A DNA stretch of 63,484 nt, counting the filler, from Octopus bimaculoides (taxonomy: Eukaryota): NCBI RefSeq assembly GCF_001194135.2. It is 5 parts of 5 records of this genome, joined end to end, with 100 filler letters (N's around TTAATTAATTAA, not from the genome) between each part and the next. Parts side by side here need not be neighbours in the genome. Positions count along the whole stretch, not along the records: positions 20,609 to 43,310 come from NC_068989.1; 4 more parts are not named here. One strand, 5' to 3'. Shown here piece after piece: positions 9,463-43,255 of the stretch (its first letter is position 1; every line of letters begins with the position of its first letter). The notes under the pieces are model-generated. The model had not been told where the DNA came from, ran no database searches, and worked only from the letters and a program-made list of their open reading frames with translations. Made by a program: the position numbers and the translations under genes.

Positions 9463-9586
9463 GTCTGTTTACTTATCTATCTATCTATCTACCCACCCAC
9501 CTACTTACCTACTTACCTACCTACCTAACCTCCCACCTATCTATCTATCTATCTATCTATCCATCCATCCATCCATCCATCCATCC

Positions 9587-9622
<36 letters not shown>

Positions 9623-10260
9623 CTCTATCTATCTATCTATCTATTTATCTACCTATCTATCTATCTANNNNNNNNNNNNNNNNNNNNNNNNNNNNNNNNN
9701 NNNNNNNNNNNNNNNNNNNNNNNNNNNNNNNNNNNNNNNNNNNNNNNNNNNNNNNNNNNNNNNNNNNNNNNNNNNNNNNNNNNNNNNNNNNNNNNNNNNN
9801 NNNNNNNNNNNNNNNNNNNNNNNNNNNNNNNNNNNNNNNNNNNNNNNNNNNNNNNNNNNNNNNNNNNNNNNNNNNNNNNNNNNNNNNNNNNNNNNNNNNN
9901 NNNNNNNNNNNNNNNNNNNNNNNNNNNNNNNNNNNNNNNNNNNNNNNNNNNNNNNNNNNNNNNNNNNNNNNNNNNNNNNNNNNNNNNNNNNNNNNNNNNN
10001 NNNNNNNNNNNNNNNNNNNNNNNNNNNNNNNNNNNNNNNNNNNNNNNNNNNNNNNNNNNNCACCTATCTATCTATCTATCTATCTATCCATCCATCCATC
10101 CATCCATCCATCTATCTATCTATCTATTTTAATATTTTTTTTTAATCGTTTTATTTTTGTTCCTGCTGGATCCTACTTGTCTGTCCATGACAGCTTTCCT
10201 TTCAATTCAGCTGCAATCACTTTCCTCATTTTCTCAACGTTCATCCCCGGGATGGAGCAA

Positions 10261-20771: not shown

Positions 20772-22215
20772 GAGTTTGGACTCTCAAAATGTGCTATGAT
20801 GGTGATGAGATAAGGAAAGCTTGCCAGGACAGAAGGCATATGGCTGCCAAGTGGTGAAATGATGAAGGCAATTCAATCCCAATCCAGTTATAAATACCTG
20901 GAAATACTTGAGGCAGATGGATTCAAATATCGCAACATGAAGGAAAAGATGAAAAGGGAGTATGTGCAGCAAGTAAGAAAAATATTGGCTTCTAAGCCGA
21001 ATGCAAGAAATATAATTTCATCAATAAATTCGTGCACAGTCACAGTAGTTCAGTATGGCGCTGGAATCCTGAAGTGGACAGAGGAGGAGCTAAAGGAGGT
21101 GGACAGAAAGTCAAGAAAGCTCCTAATGATGCTCCTAATGAAGCCCATCATCCACATGCAGACATTGATTGCGTATACATGAAGAGAGCAAATGGCGGAA
21201 GGGGACTGATAAGTGTAGACGACTACATGTATATCAAACTCAAGAGCTTAATGAGATTCCTAGGCTAAAGTAAGGAAACCTTGCTAGTGACAGTTAAGAA
21301 CAAAGGAGTATTGAGAGCAGAAAAAAAGGGAAGAAGTACAAACAGGACATGAAGAAGAATTGCACAACAAGGGTCTACACATTCAATTCCATGGAGCCAC
21401 AACAGAAGTTGCTGGAGAAAATAGGTGGGATTGGCTGATGAAAGGAACCCTAAAAAAAGAGACAGAGAGCACTAATACTGGCAGCACATGACCAAGCTTT
21501 GGCCACAAACTGGAGGGTCAACCTTAGGAATGAGCAAGTGTCCCCACTGTGCTGCATCTGCAATAGAGTGGATGAAATCATTGCCCATATCAGGAATGAA
21601 TGCCCTAGACTTGCCTAAAACCAATACAAGTTGTGGTGACACAACCAGGTAGTGTAAGTGCTACATTGGAAACTGTGTGAAAAGTGGGGGATAGAGAGAG
21701 GCAAGATGTGGTATGAGCACAAACCACTGTGAGCAGTGGAGTTGAAGACTAGCAAAATCCTCTGAGATTTCCCACTCAAAACAGATTGGGTGCTAAAGCA
21801 TAATGGATCAGTCCTAGTGGTGGTGGACAAGGAGCACCACATAACTATATAGTTGATGTTTCAAGCCCCTTTGACCCATGTGTAGTCAAGAAGGAAAAGG
21901 AAATTATAGATAGATACAACCCTCTTAAGTACAAAATACCCCAGCTATGGTAAATGAAGAAGGTGAAGACAGGGCCAATTATTGTTTGGTCCTTGGGAAC
22001 AATATCAGAAGGCATCAAGAGGAATATAAAGGAAATTGGAATAGAGTGCCCAGTAGTACTACACAAAAGGTTTGCCTCCTTGGCATGGCCAAAATAATCA
22101 GGAAAGTATTAGATAGCTGAAAAGAACGAATAGTATGGTACCATAGGCTGCAGGTAGTAAGCCCGCTATGCATGCAAGACTCCAGGAGCTACAACAAAAC
22201 CTGTGGTAAAGAGAA
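20771..22215 (+). mobile_element. 5'-truncated R4/Dong-like non-LTR retrotransposon (RT C-terminus, CCHC, restriction-like endonuclease), decayed, within a (TAA)n array
   Basis: EFGLSKCA...SYKYLEILEAD...WTEEELKEVDRKSRKL, GGRGLISVDD, CCICNRVDEIIAHIRNEC (~21550-21603), degenerate RLE motif, ending IIRKVLDS* at 22120; (AAT)n on both sides (20683-20770 and ~22215-22241). Confidence 0.88.
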
Positions 22216-22242
22216 AATAATAATAATAATAATAATAATAAT

Positions 22243-22436
22243 GGTTTCAAATTTTGGCATAGAGCCAGCAGTTTTTGAGTGGAGGAGTAAGTTGATTGCA
22301 TCAATGTCTGGACTTGATTTTAATGACCCTAAAAGGGTAACGGGCAAAGCCAGCCTTGGAAGGATTTGAGTTCAGAACATAGAAGCAAAATGTCGTTATG
22401 CATTTTGTCTGGTCTGCTAATGATTCTGCCAGGACA
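22243..22436 (-). mobile_element. tRNA-derived SINE family D
   Basis: Reverse complement of CTGGCAGAATCGTTAGC...GAGTTCAAATTCC...GACTTTGCCTTTCATCCTTTCGGGGTCGATAAA...; (ATT)n tail. Confidence 0.7.
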
Positions 22437-22618
22437 CAACCCTAATAATAATAATAATAATAGTTTCAAATTTTGGCACAAGGCCAGTAATTTCAATTAA
22501 ATTGACTTTGGTGCTCAACTAGTACTTATTTTATTGCTCTTGAAAGGATGAAAGGCAAACTCAACTCCAGCAACATTTGGACCCAGAATATAAAGATGTC
22601 GGACAAAATACTTAGGTA

Positions 22619-22791
22619 ATACAGTTCTATATTTAAGAGATGAGGAATTATGTACATTATTTACATTCGATGGATATTTGTCCTCATCTTGTTTGTTGTT
22701 AACACAATGTTTCAGCTGATATACACTCCAGCCTTCTTCAGGTGTCTTGGGGAAATTTCGGACCAGGGTTCTAAATACTAAGGTATTTTTC

Positions 22792-22829
<38 letters not shown>

Positions 22830-22932
22830 CATTGTTGTTGTTGTTATTGTTATTGTTCAGGTCATTGCTTGGAATCAAACTCAGAATCTTGGGGTTAGTA
22901 GCCCGCGCTCTTAACCACTACGCTATATGCCC
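22619..22932 (-). mobile_element. SINE-like family E: tRNA-like head + (AAT)n + minimal hammerhead module
   Basis: Minus: GGGCATATAGCGTAGTGGTTAAG (A box) ... GAGTTTGATTCC (B box), (AAT)n, then GACAC-CTGAAGA-A-GGCTG-loop-CAGCT-GAAA-C-ATT-GTGTT. Confidence 0.8.
22701..22746 (-). ncRNA. Minimal Type I hammerhead ribozyme (Penelope-type)
   Basis: Stem I GACAC/GUGUU, core CUGAAGA, stem II GGCUG/CAGCU, GAAA intact; helix III ACAU instead of the palindromic ACGU, consistent with CpG decay. Confidence 0.7.
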
Positions 22933-22936
22933 AATC

Positions 22937-22982
22937 GATTCTGAGTTCGATTCCAAGCAGTGACCTGAACAATAACAATAAC

Positions 22983-23016
<34 letters not shown>

Positions 23017-23156
23017 TCGAAAAATACCTTAGGAATGAGAACCCAGGTTCAAAATTTCCCCAAGATACCTGATGAAAGCTGGAAGGTATATCAGCCAAAA
23101 CATTGTGTTAACAACAAACAAGATGAGGACAAATATCTATCGAATGTAAATAATGT
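22937..23156 (+). mobile_element. Second, inverted and truncated copy of family E
   Basis: Starts inside the tRNA head (GATTCTGAGTTCGATTCC) and mirrors 22653-22888. Confidence 0.85.
23064..23109 (+). ncRNA. Minimal hammerhead ribozyme, degenerate
   Basis: GATAC-CTGATGA-A-AGCTG-loop-CAGCC-AAAA-C-ATT-GTGTT; G12 mutated to A. Confidence 0.6.
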
Positions 23157-23235
23157 AAAATACTTAGGTATTTTGTCCAGCATGTTAAAGATTCTACCAG
23201 CTTGCTACCCTCATCCTAATAGTGATAATAATAAT

Positions 23236-23421
23236 GATTTCAAATTTTGGTACAATGCCTGCAATTTTGGGGGAGGAGGATAAGTGCTTGACTGGTATTT
23301 ACTTTATCAACCCCGAAAGGATGAAAGGCAAAGTCAGTTTTGAACTCAGAATGCAAAGACAGATGAATTGCCACGAAGCATTTTGCCCTGCATGCTAATG
23401 GTTCTGCCAGCCTGCCACCCT
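23236..23421 (-). mobile_element. SINE family D
   Basis: Third tandem D copy with CCCCGAAAGGATGAAAGGCAAAGTC. Confidence 0.72.
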
Positions 23422-23924
23422 CACCCACATAATAATTAAAGAACAATAATAACATCTGTCTTGACTTACTTTCAATAGGAGGCGGGGCGCACTTCTCTGA
23501 ATCTTCATTATCAGCTATTTCCTGAAAATTGATTAAAGCAAAATGTTAAGGGTTTCTGTGGTGGCATCATTTTCTCTACACTACTTGAAACACACACACA
23601 CACACACACACGCACACATGCACACACACACACACATACATACATACACAATGAAAACCAGTACAAAATAAAGCTCATGATTTCTGGCCTATTGAAATGA
23701 CTATATTTATGTTACGTAGATGCCTTTCTATTAGTACCTTTGAGAGACTGAGACTGATAAGGCAAAAGAAAGAAGGTTATTATGATGTATGTATGTATGT
23801 ATGTACGTATGTATGTACACATATATTTACATTTACAGACAAATAGATAGATACTTAGAGTGAAAGAGAGAGAGGAGAGAGATAAATGGTACGTAGGTAC
23901 ATAAATATGTACATAGACAGATAT

Positions 23925-24126
23925 TACTCTTTTACTTGTTTCATTCATTTGACTGCTGCCATACTGGAGCACTACCTTTAGTCAAGCAAACCGACCCCGG
24001 GACTTATACTTTGTAAGCCTAGTACTTATTCTATCGGTCTCTTTTGCCGAACCGCTAAGTGACGGGGACATAAACACACCTGCATCAGTTGTTAAGCAAT
24101 GCTAGGGGACAAACACAGACACACAA

Positions 24127-24165
<39 letters not shown>

Positions 24166-24340
24166 CATATATACGACGGGCTTCTTTCAGTTTCTGTCTA
24201 TCAAATCTACTCACAAGGCTTTGGTTGGCCCGAGGCTATAGTAGAAGACACTTGCCCAAGGTGCCACACAGTGGGACTGAACCCAGAACCATGTGGTTGG
24301 TAAGCAAGAAGCTACTTACCACACAGCCACTCCTGCACCT
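23925..24340 (-). mobile_element. SINE family A, full length
   Basis: A/B-box head at the right, ACTCTTT tail at the left. Confidence 0.88.
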
Positions 24341-24805
24341 ATATATAAGAATGTAGATAGATAGACAAATGAATGGATAAAATGATAAATAAGTGGATAG
24401 ACAGATATATAAGCAGACAGACAGACTTATCTATAATAATAAATGCCAAAAGGAATTTCTGTGTGTCAGTTTGTCACACTTTGACCCCCCCCCCTCTCAC
24501 TATTCAATGACACATTAAAATCAATGACCCATTAAAATCAATGACACTTCTACTCACTCTTCTTGTTGGGGTGAGAGTAATAGTAGGCATAGAGACGGTG
24601 AAGGCAGTAGTAGATTGACAATTGAGATGGTAATAGGGTGATAATAATAGTATGAGCTGGTGGTGGTGGTGGTGGTGGTGGTGGTGGTAGCTGAGGTGGT
24701 CAAGCATGATGGTGATAATAAGGAATATGAAAGTCAAAGGTGTTGATGGTGGGCATCAGTAGTCTGAATGGTGTGTGTATGGTAGTTGTGGTAGCGATGG
24801 TGGTA

Positions 24806-24896
24806 GCACTGGGGATGGTGATGGTTGAAAACAAACAACAGAAAGGGGATTTATTTCCCTGCTATTGATATAAACTAGTGCATTTTGCACCAAAAG
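24806..24896 (+). repeat. Orphan fragment of the ~350-bp HHR repeat
   Basis: GGGGATTTATTTCCCTGCTATTGATATAAACTAGTGCATTTTGCACCAAAAG matches the monomers at 26.5-27.3 kb. Confidence 0.65.
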
Positions 24897-25028
24897 AGGT
24901 TAGACAGAAAAAAAAAAAAATTGTGCTGACCTCCCGAATGGGAAAACAAAAAAATGTCACTTGTCATGAAGCTTTGCAATATATCCTTATTTTGACGAAA
25001 ATTGCTCATTGCTTGAAAAATATTGGTC

Positions 25029-25167
25029 AGCTTGCTTACCAACCACATAGTTCTGGGTTCAGTCCCATTGCATGGCACCTTGGGCAAGTGTCTTTTACTA
25101 TAGCCTCGGGCCGATCAAAGCCTTGTGAGTGGATTTGGTAGACGGAAACTGAAAGAAGCCCATCGTA

Positions 25168-25216
<49 letters not shown>

Positions 25217-25424
25217 GTGTGTATATGTTTGTCCTCCCGACATCGCTTGACAACCGATGCTGGTGTGTTTACGTCCCCGTAACTTAGCGGTTCAGCAAAA
25301 GAGACCGATAGAATGAGTACTAGGCTTCCAAAGAAGAAGTCCTGGGGTTGATTTGCTCAACTAAAGGCGGAGCTCCAGCATGGCCGCAGTCAAAAGACTG
25401 AAACAAGTAAAAGAGTAAAAGAGT
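25029..25424 (+). mobile_element. SINE family A (A box missing)
   Basis: B box GGTTCAGTCCC, CORE-like block, internal (TA)n, tail GAGTAAAAGAGTA. Confidence 0.88.
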
Positions 25425-40081: not shown

Positions 40082-40925
40082 CAAGGTGGTATCAAAGAGT
40101 TCCTGGACTAGTTATGTTCAATAAAAGGTAAATTATTTTATTCTTTTATTCTTTTACCTGTTTCAGTCATTTTACTGTGGCCATGCTTGAGCACCGCCTT
40201 TCGTCGAGAAAATTGACCACAGGATTTATTCCTTTTAAGCCTAGTGCTTATTCTATCAGTTTTTTATTCCGAACTGCTAAGTTATGGGGACGTAAACACA
40301 CCAGCATTGGTTGTCAAGTGATGTTGTGGGGGACAAACACATACACACACAGACATGTTTTAACATCATCTCCTTGGAAATAGTCATCTTGCACAGTGTT
40401 CCTTCTACTTTTGGAATTTGGCCTGAAAGTCATTTTCCATGAGTTAAGGACCTTCTGCAATTTGCTCTTGATCTCGACAATGGTGTTAAAATGGTGACGT
40501 TTGGGCTGCATTTTCATCTTGGGGAAGAAATAGAAGTCTACAGGTGCTAAATTTGGTGAACAGAACGGGTGCAGAAGCAATATCATGTTGTTTTTTATGA
40601 GAAACTCATGAGTAAGGAGAGCTTGGTGACAGGGTGCATTGTCATCATAAAGAATCCAATTCTTTGCATTCCACACAAATCTGATTGCTTTCATCGAAAG
40701 TTCTCTCTCAAACGCTTTAAAATATCACTGTAGAACTCTCGATTGATGGTCTGGCCCTGGGGAACAAATTCTCAATTCACAATACTGTGGATGTCAGCAA
40801 AAATGATGAGCAGCCTCTTAACTGAGCTGTGACTCTGTCATGCCTTTTGAAGCGTCTGTGCCACTCAAGGCATTGTATATGACCCATTGAACCATCGCTG
40901 TAAACTTGCCAAAGCATGCTCTCAT
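40082..40925 (-). mobile_element. Internally deleted mariner (DD34D) with right TIR, interrupted by a SINE fragment
   Basis: TA|CAAGGTGGTATCAAAGAGTTCCTGGACTAG TIR; minus translations QCLEWHRRFK, EFVPQGQTINREFY, WILYDDNAPCH...HPFCSPNLAPVDFYFFPKMK, QDDYFQGD. Confidence 0.88.
40135..40352 (-). mobile_element. SINE family A 3' half nested in mariner
   Basis: TCTTT tail and body match. Confidence 0.78.
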
Positions 40926-40949
40926 TTTAACAGATATATTTACCAAAAT

Positions 40950-41580
40950 TACATAAAAATAACTTGAAATACTAAAGAGTAAATTTATTCAATAAAATCA
41001 CCATTGGCTTCAACCATGTCCTCCAGATGACTTCAAACTTTCCTGCAACTCTGATGGATGGTTTCCTTGTTTAAGTTGGTGAATGCTGCCATAATCCTTG
41101 CCTTCAGTTCATCTTTGGTGTTACAAGGAGTTTTGTTAGTCTCTCACTGAACTGTACCCCACACATAATAATCAAGGGTGTTGCAGTGTGGGGAGCTAGG
41201 TGGCCAGATGTTAGGGGTGATGTGGTCACAGAAATTGTCTGACAGCCATGACTGGGTTCTCCTCCTTGTGTGGAATGGAGCAGAATCCTGTTACCAGACA
41301 GAGGGCCTTCCAGCAGCCACCCTCTTGACTAAGGGCAGCACTACCTTCTCCAGGCACTTGATGTAGGCTTCTCTGTTGAGTAGAAGGCCGTGCAGGAAGA
41401 TGAATGGAGGCACAACGTCACCATCACTAAAGATCATTACTCCGAACACCATGATGTTGACTGGATATTTGATTTTGATCTCTCTTGGTACATGTTTTGG
41501 GGACACGGCAAACACTCAGATTGACACCCAAACACTCTGAAATGTTCATATTGGAGCTTCCATCACAACATCTTGATTCT
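40950..41580 (-). mobile_element. DD37D (maT-like) transposase remnant
   Basis: IMVFGVMIFSDGDVVPPFIF...AYIKCLEKVVLP...W*QDSAPFH...WPPSSPHCNTLDYYVWG. Confidence 0.82.
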
Positions 41581-42803
41581 CTCTAGCACGTTGCTTAGCA
41601 ATCCAAAAATATCTCATGCCGCTCATCTTCAATTTGAAGAATACACGAAAACTTCTTTCTTTCTGCTTCTGGGTTTAGATTTCATTCTAGCCATTTGAAT
41701 TTTAATCTCCTGCCTCTCTTTCTTCCAATCAGTCCAAACCTATCTCTGAGCTCTGATGGATTTATTCAAACCACCACGACCACCACCACCAACAACAACA
41801 CCATATGATCTTATGCCAACCACAGGACTGTGTTGTAGGCCTCCACAGGCTGGAATAAGGACATGTTCAGCTTTTTATTATATTATGAGTCTCTATTTCC
41901 TTCTCTTTTCCAACATAAGCATTGACATAACTTTTTAGAATCTAAACCTGGACAAGGACTCTTTTAGCTTCCATTGTCATTTGTTTCTGAGTCCTTCAAG
42001 CTCTTCTTCCAAAGTCATGTGAAGACCTATAACCTTTATGACCATTTACCAATCTTACTTCATGGTTAGAATAAAATCCAGCTCACATGTGTGTTTGCCT
42101 GATTAGTAAGTCATCAGGTGACTGGCTGATGTGTGTGTGTGTGTATGTGTGTGTGAGTGTGTATGAGTGGGGGTATGCTTATAAGCAGCCCCCTCCCACA
42201 TCATTCTTAGGAGAAGTGACGGGTCATGTTCAAGCATATATACACACACACATATATATACACACACGCACACACACATATACAAAGAGAGAGAGAGATA
42301 GTTAGATTTACACATATTCATATATATATATATACATACATGTCAGTGTGTGCAAAGTTCTGTTTTCTTGTTTATATGTTTAATATGGCTTTTGACCACA
42401 TTATAGTAAATTGATAATTGATTATCAATAGAGATATTTTAAATGTAATTACATGTATGCATATAATGTTGATTGACCTAAATTTATTGTCGGTTCCAGC
42501 TTATTTGGCTCAGCATCAAACATGAACTATATTATTCTACAGAGATTTTCATATTTGTGCAGAAATGAAAACATTGATAAATGGAATATAAAACAAAATT
42601 ATGGATTTTAGTCCATCATTGAAAATATGAATTAATTATTTATTTAACAATTTCTTAAAGGTTACTCCAAAATAGCAATCCATTAATTGTTAGTCTTCAC
42701 CACAACAAGTGTAACCTACTCATACCCAATATGTTGTGTGTGTATGTGAGTGTGGGTGTGTGTATGCGTGTGTTTGTGTCTGTGTGTGTGTGTGTATGTA
42801 TAT

Positions 42804-43225
42804 AGGCATAGGAGTGACTGTGGTAAGTAGCTTGCTTACAAACCACATGAGTCCAGGTTAAGTCACACTGTGTGGCACCTTGGGCAAGTGTCTTCTACTA
42901 TAGCCTCGGGCCAACCAAAGCTTTGTGACTGGATTTAGTAGATGGAAACTGAAAGAAGCCTGTCATATATATTTATATATATATATATATGTGAGTGTGT
43001 AAGTGTGTGTGTGTTTGTGCATGTCTGCGTTTGTACCGCCAACATCGCTTGGCAACTGATGCTGATGTGTTTACGTCCCTGTAACTTAGCAGTTCGGCAA
43101 AAATGTCCAATAGAATAGCTACTAGGCTTACAAAGAATAAGTCCTGGGGTTGAGTTGCTCAACTAAAGGTGGTGCTCCATCATGGCCACAGTCAAATGAC
43201 TGAAACAAATGAAAGAATAAAAGAA
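42804..43225 (+). mobile_element. SINE family A, full length
   Basis: AGGCATAGGAGTGACTGTGG head through (GAATAAAA) tail. Confidence 0.85.
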
Positions 43226-43255
43226 TATGTATATATATATGTATATATTTATATA

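What the first reader, a model, noticed from the sequence alone, without database searches (positions are those of the whole stretch)
22605..23170. Single insertion event produced a head-to-head inverted dimer bounded by a 14-bp TSD in a hairpin target
Seen: arms 22653-22888 and 22937-23156 are inverted copies of family E around a 48-bp spacer. The direct repeat AAAATACTTAGGTA flanks the whole (22605-22618 and 23157-23170). Removing it restores a continuous SINE D whose target reads GGACAAAATAC-TTAG-GTATTTTGTCC, a perfect 11-bp hairpin. Established: L1 twin priming inverts without duplicating, whereas PLE insertions often carry inverted partial terminal copies. Inference: a PLE-like fold-back or template-switch integration, possibly at a cruciform-prone site. 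Its transcript would form ~230 bp of dsRNA, a possible A-to-I editing or siRNA substrate.
Basis: partly seen in the sequence, partly recalled or inferred. Interest (0 to 1): 0.7.

Follow-up and report, generated by a model that had tools for sequence, protein, structure and literature searches.

The report
Inverted Penelope-type SINE pair in octopus
A short octopus retroelement with a tRNA-like head and a hammerhead-ribozyme-type tail was inserted in one event as two copies facing each other, which is the known signature of Penelope-like retrotransposons, so the finding is real but of a known kind.

Summary
Two inverted copies of one element lie inside a single exact 14-bp target-site duplication (22605-22618, 23157-23170). 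Removing the insert restores an older SINE and a perfect 11-bp hairpin.

The 48-bp "spacer" is not a spacer. It is the 5' part of the tRNA-like head (A and B boxes) of a full-length minus-strand copy (22619-22932). The plus-strand copy (22937-23156) lacks about 45 nt of that head. It also lacks the last 34 nt.

The element's 3' module fits the minimal hammerhead ribozyme described for Penelope-like element (PLE) repeats. There is one hit in the piece and none in 200 random pieces.

The one-sided 34-nt "tail", the head-to-head 5'-truncated partner, the palindrome at the junction and the short duplication are all published PLE hallmarks. Two related loci from other assemblies repeat the architecture. 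One has a 12-bp duplication, a tail on one end only, and a quasi-palindromic target.

Best reading: one PLE-type integration of a tRNA-headed, ribozyme-bearing non-autonomous element. The two DNA strands were probably primed separately, at the two known reverse-transcription start sites.

It is a new member of a known kind. No autonomous PLE partner was seen, ribozyme activity was not tested, and no genome-wide census was possible.

The parts
22436..22618 (-). Host SINE D copy, part left of the insertion. D lies on the minus strand and has an (ATT)n tail.
   Evidence: Aligns with other D copies across the junction.
22601..22618 (.). Left part of the target palindrome GGACAAAATAC-TTAG-GTA. It includes the left target-site duplication, 22605-22618.
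22619..22652 (-). 34-nt 3' 'tail' of the full-length copy (CATAATTCCTCATCTCTTAAATATAGAACTGTAT). It is absent from the right arm.
   Evidence: Conserved in L008 9522-9551 and in the Octopus bimaculoides peptide P0001 (...HNSSSLKYRTI).
22619..22932 (-). Full-length copy of family E: tRNA-like head, (AAC/AAT)n, 3' module, tail.
22702..22745 (-). PLE-type minimal hammerhead motif: ACAC-CUGAAGA-A-GGCUGG..UCAGCU-GAAA-CAU-U|GUGU.
   Evidence: Only descriptor hit in the 22.7-kb piece; 0 hits in 200 random pieces. The MFE fold gives helices I and II. The consensus of 9 copies is a perfect motif.
22638..22689 (-). Stem AGAUGAGGA/UCCUCAUCU closing a loop that holds the internal 3' terminus. The 3' strand of the stem lies in the tail.
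   Evidence: The same fold appears in the L008 copy.
22795..22857 (-). Internal microsatellite, (AAT)n(AAC)n in element sense.
   Evidence: Also found upstream of the module in L004, L007, L019 and L024.
22855..22932 (-). tRNA-like head. A box TAGCGTAGTGG at 22915-22925, B box GAGTTTGATTCC at 22871-22882.
   Evidence: The A/B-box pattern matches once in the window and 0 times in 100 shuffles. ARAGORN and Rfam do not call a tRNA.
22933..22940 (.). 8-bp palindrome AATCGATT at the inverted junction. CCCAA at 22930-22934 is possible microhomology with CCCCAA of the element.
22937..23156 (+). Inverted partner copy. It is 5'-truncated (lacks about 45 nt of the head, including the A box) and tail-less (ends ...AATGTAAATAATGTA).
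   Evidence: B box at 22943-22954, microsatellite at 22968-23015.
23065..23108 (+). Decayed hammerhead motif of the right copy (CUGAUGA...AAAAC; G12 lost at a CpG).
23157..23170 (.). Right target-site duplication AAAATACTTAGGTA.
23171..23214 (-). Host SINE D copy, part right of the insertion. 23171-23178 completes the target palindrome.

Best explanation
Family E is a non-autonomous retroelement of an octopod genome. It has four parts: a tRNA-derived head with pol III A and B boxes, an (AAC/AAT)n stretch, a 3' module of the kind found in the terminal repeats of Penelope-like elements (PLEs), and an optional tail of 30-34 nt. The module holds a minimal hammerhead ribozyme motif followed by a stem-loop.

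The structure at 22605-23170 is one PLE-type integration into the anticodon-arm-like quasi-palindrome of an older SINE.

Shown:
- One 14-bp target-site duplication bounds the whole structure.
- One full-length copy carries the tail.
- One head-to-head copy is 5'-truncated and tail-less.
- Both outer ends lie at the family's two recurrent 3' termini.

Inferred mechanism: the PLE enzyme nicked both strands 14 bp apart and each 3' end primed reverse transcription of an E RNA. The plus-strand end started at the distal site, which keeps the tail, and ran to the RNA's 5' end. The minus-strand end started at the internal site, which gives no tail, and stopped about 45 nt short of the RNA's 5' end. 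The two cDNAs were then joined at a short palindrome or microhomology (AATCGATT, CCCAA). The arms have since diverged by about 5% each, much of it at CpG sites.
For: One event:
- The duplication is exact at 14 bp and the empty site is continuous in paralogous D copies.
- There are no nested duplications at the inner ends.
- Derived changes are roughly balanced between the arms when polarised with relatives.

PLE type:
[quoted passage not shown] These are the features listed in PMC4209133.
- It is the only descriptor hit in the piece, with 0 hits in 200 random pieces. The consensus of nine copies is a perfect motif.
- The 34-nt tail sits on one end only and is conserved in L008 and in P0001.
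- Among 34 related peptides the match ends at profile position 41-45 in about 19 and at 51-52 in 10. That is two discrete ends.

Published hallmarks:
- An inverted 5'-truncated copy at the 5' end and a 30-40-bp tail at one end (PMC8557442).
- A palindrome at the inverted junction and a TSD of 8-10 bp (PMC3846280).
- A purified PLE protein nicks and extends both strands. It starts reverse transcription at two internal sites whose interval is the tail (PMC11167929).
- Paired min-hammerheads on opposite strands, 100-700 bp apart (PMC4209133).

Recurrence:
- L008 has a 12-bp duplication. One end is an inverted 82-nt copy with the tail. The other end is a long tail-less copy ending ...AATGTAAATAATGTA(T).
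- L019-L022 have a full-length copy abutted head-to-head by a copy lacking about 11 nt of its 5' end.
Against: - No autonomous PLE (RT plus GIY-YIG) was seen in the piece or linked to E. None of 93 peptide relatives is longer than 195 aa.
- Rfam reports no hammerhead at E <= 10.
- Covariation on nine decayed copies is no better than shuffles.
- Ribozyme activity is untested, and the right copy's core is broken.
- No tRNA is called by ARAGORN or Rfam.
- Arm mismatches cluster in the middle of the element (16/83 against 3/106, p = 3e-4). This is not expected for uniform decay of identical arms.
- No other E copy lies in the piece, and the host genome could not be searched. The frequency of dimers is therefore unknown.
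- The tail-less end here is 0-6 nt short of the commonest terminus in relatives (...GTAAATAAT).
Confidence: 0.7

Rival explanations
1. The integration is PLE-type, but the second arm was made by self-priming. After reaching the RNA's 5' end, the first cDNA folded back on itself at a short complementary stretch and copied itself.
For: - The centre of symmetry is at the element's 5' end.
- There is an 8-bp palindrome AATCGATT and a possible CCCAA/TTGGG pairing at the junction.
- Palindromes at inverted junctions were read as self-priming in PMC3846280.
- Derived changes are roughly balanced between the arms, which fits identical arms at the start.
Against: - A fold-back copy should run on through the tail of its template. 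Instead it stops within a few nt of the family's recurrent internal terminus, the same place as in L008 and other loci.
- The predicted fold-back product reads CCCAAGATTC, but the sequence has CCCAATCGATTC.
- A purified PLE extends both strands on its own (PMC11167929).
Confidence: 0.15
2. LINE-driven twin priming, or template switching between two SINE RNAs, with no PLE involved.
For: - E has a tRNA-like head like LINE-dependent SINEs.
- A 14-bp duplication is in the LINE range.
- Twin priming gives 5' inversions (PMC2912911).
Against: - Twin-priming overlaps are small (median 12 bp), and inversions are very rare for short elements (0.02% for Alu) (PMC12016303). Here about 236 bp are present twice.
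- There is no poly(A) or microsatellite 3' end.
- The 3' module fits a PLE-type hammerhead motif, and the ends show the optional tail.
Confidence: 0.05
3. A ready-made inverted dimer elsewhere in the genome was transcribed and copied here as one unit (a read-through or 5'-transduction transcript).
For: - One duplication bounds the whole structure.
- The arms are 10% diverged while the duplication is perfect, though the chance of that is 0.23 even for one event.
- PLEs use longer-than-unit templates (PMC4209133).
Against: - The 5' end of such a transcript would have to fall exactly at the internal start site of the antisense arm.
- Derived changes are roughly balanced and many are at CpGs, as expected for decay in place.
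- It only moves the origin of the dimer to another locus.
Confidence: 0.05
4. Two independent insertions that happen to abut, a DNA-level inverted duplication, or an assembly artefact.
For: - SINEs are dense here.
- Another inverted SINE pair lies 750 bp away.
- The scaffold has N runs.
Against: - There are no inner duplications. The inner ends abut to the base and the outer ends share one exact 14-bp duplication.
- The arms are diverged, so this is not a hairpin artefact.
- The nearest N run is 5 kb away.
- The same architecture occurs in unrelated assemblies.
Confidence: 0.04

Closest known systems
Insertion architecture of endonuclease-positive Penelope-like elements (Penelope/Poseidon, Neptune, Naiad; rotifer Pen2a)
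   Same: - A head-to-head inverted 5'-truncated copy at the 5' end.
- An optional 30-40-bp tail on one end only.
- A palindrome at the inverted junction.
- A short target-site duplication.
- A minimal hammerhead in the repeat.

Sources: PMC8557442, PMC3846280, PMC4209133, PMC11167929.
   Different: - There is no RT/GIY-YIG ORF and no direct pseudo-LTR.
- The unit is about 320 bp, with a tRNA-like pol III head and an internal microsatellite.
- The duplication is 14 bp, against 8-10 bp in the rotifer examples.
Sm-alpha / Sj-alpha SINE-like retroposons of schistosomes
   Same: A tRNA-derived, SINE-like element that carries a hammerhead ribozyme (PMC2770079, which cites Ferbeyre 1998 and Laha 2000).
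   Different: - The phylum and the sequence differ.
- Sm-alpha has a canonical, active type I hammerhead. E has the minimal PLE-type motif, whose activity is untested.
- Inverted dimers inside one duplication are not, to my knowledge, described for Sm-alpha.
Animal non-LTR retrozymes
   Same: They are non-autonomous, hammerhead-bearing derivatives of PLE terminal repeats (bioRxiv 10.64898/2026.07.22.740005). Distant relatives of the E module occur as tandem units of about 129 nt, seen at peptide level.
   Different: Retrozymes are tandem arrays thought to pass through circular RNA. E is dispersed, tRNA-headed and bounded by target-site duplications.
L1 twin priming (5' inversion)
   Same: Both strands of a staggered break prime cDNA synthesis, and the junction is resolved by microhomology.
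   Different: In twin priming one RNA is copied once and the overlap has a median of 12 bp (PMC12016303). Here almost the whole element is present twice, there is no poly(A), and the ends are PLE-type.

Membership tests
PLE-type insertion (pseudo-LTR architecture) | Inverted 5'-truncated copy immediately adjacent to the 5' end of a longer copy | tested here: met
   Left copy 22619-22932 is full length. Right copy 22937-23156 lacks about 45 nt of the head. They sit head to head.
PLE-type insertion (pseudo-LTR architecture) | Optional 30-40-bp tail at one end only, reflecting two reverse-transcription start sites | tested here: met
   The 34-nt tail is at 22619-22652 only. It is conserved in L008 and P0001. 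Relatives show two classes of 3' end.
PLE-type insertion (pseudo-LTR architecture) | Minimal hammerhead motif in the repeat: CUGANGA, an extra nt before helix II, a long helix II, GAAA, a palindromic 15.2-16.2, a short helix I | tested here: met
   Motif at 22702-22745. One descriptor hit in the piece and 0 in 200 random pieces. The consensus of 9 copies is a perfect motif. Covariation is inconclusive. Rfam reports no hit.
PLE-type insertion (pseudo-LTR architecture) | Short target-site duplication around the whole complex unit | tested here: met
   14 bp, exact. 12 bp in L008.
PLE-type insertion (pseudo-LTR architecture) | Dependence on a PLE reverse transcriptase with a GIY-YIG endonuclease whose repeat matches the element | not testable with these tools
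   The host genome is not in the searchable collections. No long protein is among the 93 relatives.
PLE-type insertion (pseudo-LTR architecture) | Direct partial tandem (pseudo-LTR) | tested here: not met
   There is no direct second copy at this locus. The literature describes inverted-only arrangements too (PMC3846280).
tRNA-derived SINE | 5' region derived from a tRNA, with pol III A and B boxes | tested here: inconclusive
   The A/B-box pattern with 25-45-nt spacing matches once and 0 times in 100 shuffles. No cloverleaf is called by ARAGORN or Rfam.
tRNA-derived SINE | 3' end shared with a partner LINE, or a poly(A)/microsatellite tail | tested here: not met
   The 3' end is ...AGAACTGTAT with no A-rich or repeated tail. 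The 3' module is PLE-type.
L1-type twin priming | An inverted 5' part and a direct 3' part of one RNA, with little or no sequence present twice | tested here: not met
   About 236 bp are present in both arms. The published median overlap is 12 bp (PMC12016303).
Foldback / MITE-like DNA transposon | Symmetric terminal inverted repeats with a duplication of fixed short length | tested here: not met
   The ends are unequal, with 34 extra nt on one side. The arm unit also occurs on its own contigs or in peptide form. The ends coincide with the two retroelement termini.

The most novel reading that the evidence does not exclude
A PLE enzyme acting as a dimer prefers palindromic or hairpin-forming targets and primes both strands at once. 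Each strand would use its own RNA, and each would start at either of two sites. In octopods a tRNA-headed SINE exploits this machinery. Each such event would then plant a ready-made dsRNA hairpin of about 230 bp, a systematic source of ADAR or small-RNA substrates in animals known for heavy RNA editing.

Two independent full sites support the target preference. The window site is a perfect 11-bp stem. The L008 site is a 17-nt quasi-palindrome.
Probability: 0.2. Interest if true: 0.65.

Novelty: new member of a known kind. Interest (0 to 1): 0.4.

Why it matters
How PLEs build their tandem and inverted structures is still an open question (PMC8557442). The first in vitro system was reported only in 2024 (PMC11167929).

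This insertion is only 538 bp and is fully resolved, so it works as a natural record of one event. It shows both 3' start sites used at opposite ends, a full-length arm and a truncated arm joined at a palindrome, and an intact duplication with a reconstructible target. That pattern fits two-strand priming better than fold-back.

It also shows that an octopod SINE-like family carries a PLE-type module. I found no paper in the held library that says this for cephalopods.

The palindromic targets at two loci give a testable idea about how the nuclease recognises its site. The predicted long hairpin RNA is relevant to cephalopod RNA editing, but that link is untested here.

Tried and rejected
1. 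Other E copies in the piece. There are none apart from microsatellite matches.

2. Scans of metagenome, genome and viral collections with a 21-nt E motif gave nothing. A SINE D motif gave three unrelated contigs.

3. ARAGORN and Rfam found no tRNA and no hammerhead in the window or in the related loci. Rfam models need a helix III, which min-hammerheads lack.

4. Reading the module as the N-terminus of a PLE ORF.
   - An ATG-initiated frame stays open to the element's end in three copies.
   - Against this, all 93 relatives are 195 aa or shorter. By my own count from the alignment, 10 of about 14 nucleotide differences between the arms change the amino acid, so there is no sign of coding constraint.
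   - The best-conserved peptide positions (P-[DE]-[DE]-G and P-K-x-C) are simply the translated ribozyme boxes CUGANGA and GAAAC.
   - I dropped the ORF reading.

5. Covariation of the hammerhead helices on nine copies. 78% of cells are paired, against 18-43% in the slid controls, but covariation does not exceed shuffles. The result is inconclusive.

6. Arm mismatches cluster (p = 3e-4). I first read this as evidence for two different templates. Polarising with relatives shows roughly balanced derived changes, many at CpGs, plus one three-base templated event. It therefore does not discriminate.

7. P0001 and P0020 could not be used to fetch Octopus bimaculoides DNA.

8. The nearby inverted repeat 23924-25418 is two separate copies of another SINE family.

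Full report
**Observation**

- Two inverted arms are found at 22653-22842 / 22968-23157 (190 nt, 89% complementary) and at 22811-22888 / 22937-23014 (78 nt, 92%).
- In the pairwise alignment the arms differ by 19 mismatches in 189 non-microsatellite positions, and by 15 nt of microsatellite length.
- AAAATACTTAGGTA occurs exactly at 22605-22618 and at 23157-23170.
- Joining the flanks gives a sequence that aligns without interruption to four or five other copies of SINE D in the piece. Each of these holds the duplicated stretch once.
- The restored site GGACAAAATAC-TTAG-GTATTTTGTCC is a perfect 11-bp hairpin (-10.8 kcal/mol, z = -7.7). The same position in other D copies forms weaker hairpins (-1.4 to -6.5 kcal/mol). 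The palindrome is therefore partly inherited from D's tRNA-like region and is sharper in this copy.
- The arms are diverged and the nearest N run is 5 kb away, so an assembly hairpin is unlikely.

**Anatomy**

The arms are not equal and the "spacer" is not a spacer.
- On the minus strand, 22932 to 22619 is a complete unit. It has a head with an A box (TAGCGTAGTGG) and a B box (GAGTTTGATTCC), then (AAC/AAT)n, then a unique 3' part of about 175 nt.
- The A/B-box pattern with tRNA-like spacing occurs once in the window and never in 100 shuffles. Neither ARAGORN nor Rfam calls a tRNA.
- The plus-strand copy starts just before the B box (22937) and so lacks about 45 nt of the head.
- It ends at ...AATGTAAATAATGTA (23156). 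The left copy runs 34 nt further (22652 to 22619).
- The junction holds the 8-bp palindrome AATCGATT (22933-22940).
- There are no inner duplications.

**What family E is**

- A peptide read through the 3' part matches one UniRef entry from Octopus bimaculoides at 83% identity (P0001). The host is therefore an octopod.
- A profile of this stretch finds 93 short ORFs and no long protein.
- Their best-conserved positions, P-[DE]-[DE]-G and P-K-x-C, are the translations of C-CUGANGAN-GG and CC-GAAAC. These are the two catalytic boxes of a hammerhead ribozyme.
- In the left copy the RNA reads ACAC-CUGAAGA-A-GGCUGG...UCAGCU-GAAA-CAU-U|GUGU.
[quoted passage not shown] These are the traits that define the minimal hammerheads of metazoan PLE repeats (PMC4209133).
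- A descriptor with these traits hits only this place in the 22.7-kb piece, and hits nothing in 200 random pieces.
- The consensus of nine genomic copies is a perfect motif, and the unconstrained fold gives helices I and II.
- Limits: Rfam reports no hammerhead, covariation on the nine decayed copies is inconclusive, the right copy has lost G12, and activity is untested.

**The tail and the two ends**

- The 34 nt found only on the left are part of the family. They recur in L008 (CATAATACCTCATCTCAGAAATATAGACAG) and in P0001 (...HNSSSLKYRTI).
- Among 34 close peptide relatives the match stops at profile position 41-45 in about 19 and at 51-52 in 10.
- In DNA, L004, L007, L009, L019, L024 and the L008 plus copy all end tail-less, within a few nt of the right arm's end.
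- A 9-bp stem (AGAUGAGGA/UCCUCAUCU) closes a loop that contains the internal end. Its 3' strand lies in the tail, and the L008 copy folds the same way.
- The literature describes an optional 30-40-bp tail at one end of PLE insertions (PMC8557442, PMC3846280). It shows that the tail is the interval between two internal reverse-transcription start sites in a stem-loop (PMC11167929).

**Recurrence**

- In L008, an ENA assembly contig carrying a distant relative, a 12-bp duplication ATGAATCAAGGT (9510-9521, 10164-10175) bounds two copies. One is an inverted 82-nt copy with the tail. The other is a longer copy without it.
- The L008 target AACC-ATGAATCAAGGT-T is a 17-nt quasi-palindrome.
- In L019-L022, one locus seen in four Logan runs, a full-length tRNA-headed copy is abutted head to head by a copy lacking about 11 nt of its 5' end. 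The contig starts in the (TTA)n of that inverted partner.
- In L028 an inverted partner lies 335 nt away.
- Three of the four loci where a 5' end is visible thus have an abutting inverted partner.

**Mechanism**

- Shown: one duplication bounds the whole structure. One arm is full length with the tail. The other is 5'-truncated without it. Both outer ends lie at recurrent family termini.
- Inferred: a PLE enzyme nicked both strands 14 bp apart and each 3' end primed cDNA synthesis on an E RNA, one at the distal start site and one at the internal one. The cDNAs were joined at a palindrome or microhomology.
- A purified PLE protein does nick and extend both strands (PMC11167929).
- Fold-back self-priming, proposed in PMC3846280, remains possible. 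It would not by itself explain why the second arm stops at the internal start site instead of copying the tail.
- L1-type twin priming does not fit. Its overlaps are about 12 bp, and it is nearly absent in short elements (PMC12016303, PMC2912911).
- Polarising the arm differences with relatives gives about 5 derived events on the left and 6-7 on the right. Both halves of the CpG in CCGAAAC decayed, one in each arm. This fits equal age from near-identical arms.
- The perfect duplication has a probability of 0.23 at this divergence.
- The clustering of mismatches (p = 3e-4) is not explained.

**Comparison and novelty**

- The architecture is the published PLE one.
- The element type, a tRNA-derived SINE-like retroposon with a hammerhead, has a precedent in schistosome Sm-alpha and Sj-alpha (PMC2770079).
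- Animal retrozymes are now regarded as PLE derivatives (bioRxiv 10.64898/2026.07.22.740005).
- I found no paper in the held library describing this for cephalopods.
- It is a new member of a known kind.
- The RNA of the dimer is predicted to form a hairpin of about 220 bp (-318.8 kcal/mol, z = -36.8). Editing and small RNAs could not be examined.

**Not done**

- No autonomous partner was identified.
- No genome-wide census was possible.
- No orthologous empty site or long reads were examined.
- The organisms behind the Logan and ENA contigs are not known to me.

Noticed in passing
window 22773-22788 (minus strand): The left copy reads AAATACCTTAGTATTT. The right copy and relatives L007, L019 and L004 have ...CTTAGGAATG. 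Three clustered changes turn a half-site into a perfect 6-bp hairpin, which looks like a templated quasi-palindrome 'perfecting' mutation.

The result is 16/17 identical to the target hairpin on the minus strand. The ancestral element already shared 9 nt (AAAATACCT) with the target. This may be chance or it may bear on targeting; it is unexplained.
   Followed up: partly
L008 9506-9522 and 10164-10176: The reconstructed target of the second TSD-bounded insertion, AACC-ATGAATCAAGGT-T, is a 17-nt quasi-palindrome (8 pairs, one mismatch). My rough estimate of the chance is about 0.02.
   Followed up: partly
window 22214-23445: Three SINE D copies lie head to tail on the minus strand (22214-22435, 22436-23214, 23215-23445). 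Each abuts the (ATT)n tail of its neighbour, which suggests repeated insertion into earlier tails.
   Followed up: no
window 23924-24308 and 25031-25418: An inverted pair (about 385 nt, 86-87%) of another abundant SINE family with at least 7 copies in the piece. The copies are 722 nt apart. They are separate insertions, not a PLE-type dimer.
   Followed up: partly
window 40139-43227: Inverted repeats of about 190 nt (40139-40326 / 43040-43227) flank an ORF (40314-40694) with a weak DDE_3 match. This looks like a mariner/Tc1-like DNA transposon.
   Followed up: no
window 20859-21182: A 107-aa ORF that looks, by eye, like the C-terminal part of a LINE ORF2 protein. It has no Pfam hit.
   Followed up: no
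P0020 (Octopus bimaculoides, GCA_001194135.2): A 94-aa model annotated as dystrobrevin beta isoform X1 contains the E-module peptide EGWRVYQPKCCVNNKQDEDKYPS. An E fragment seems to be exonised, or mis-annotated, in that gene.
   Followed up: no
L009 641-758 (minus strand): A 5S rRNA-like sequence (56 bits, above the gathering score) lies about 450 nt from an E-like module, on a contig seen in at least 24 sequencing runs. It may be a 5S-headed relative or an unrelated SINE3.
   Followed up: no
P0002, P0005, P0013 and others: Distant relatives of the module occur as tandem 43-aa (about 129-nt) units, QTPEEGRRTYRPKRCGNNNKDEDNSPK.LNDKNHQASSQKFRQ. This is the arrangement expected of retrozyme-like arrays. 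The source organisms are not known.
   Followed up: no
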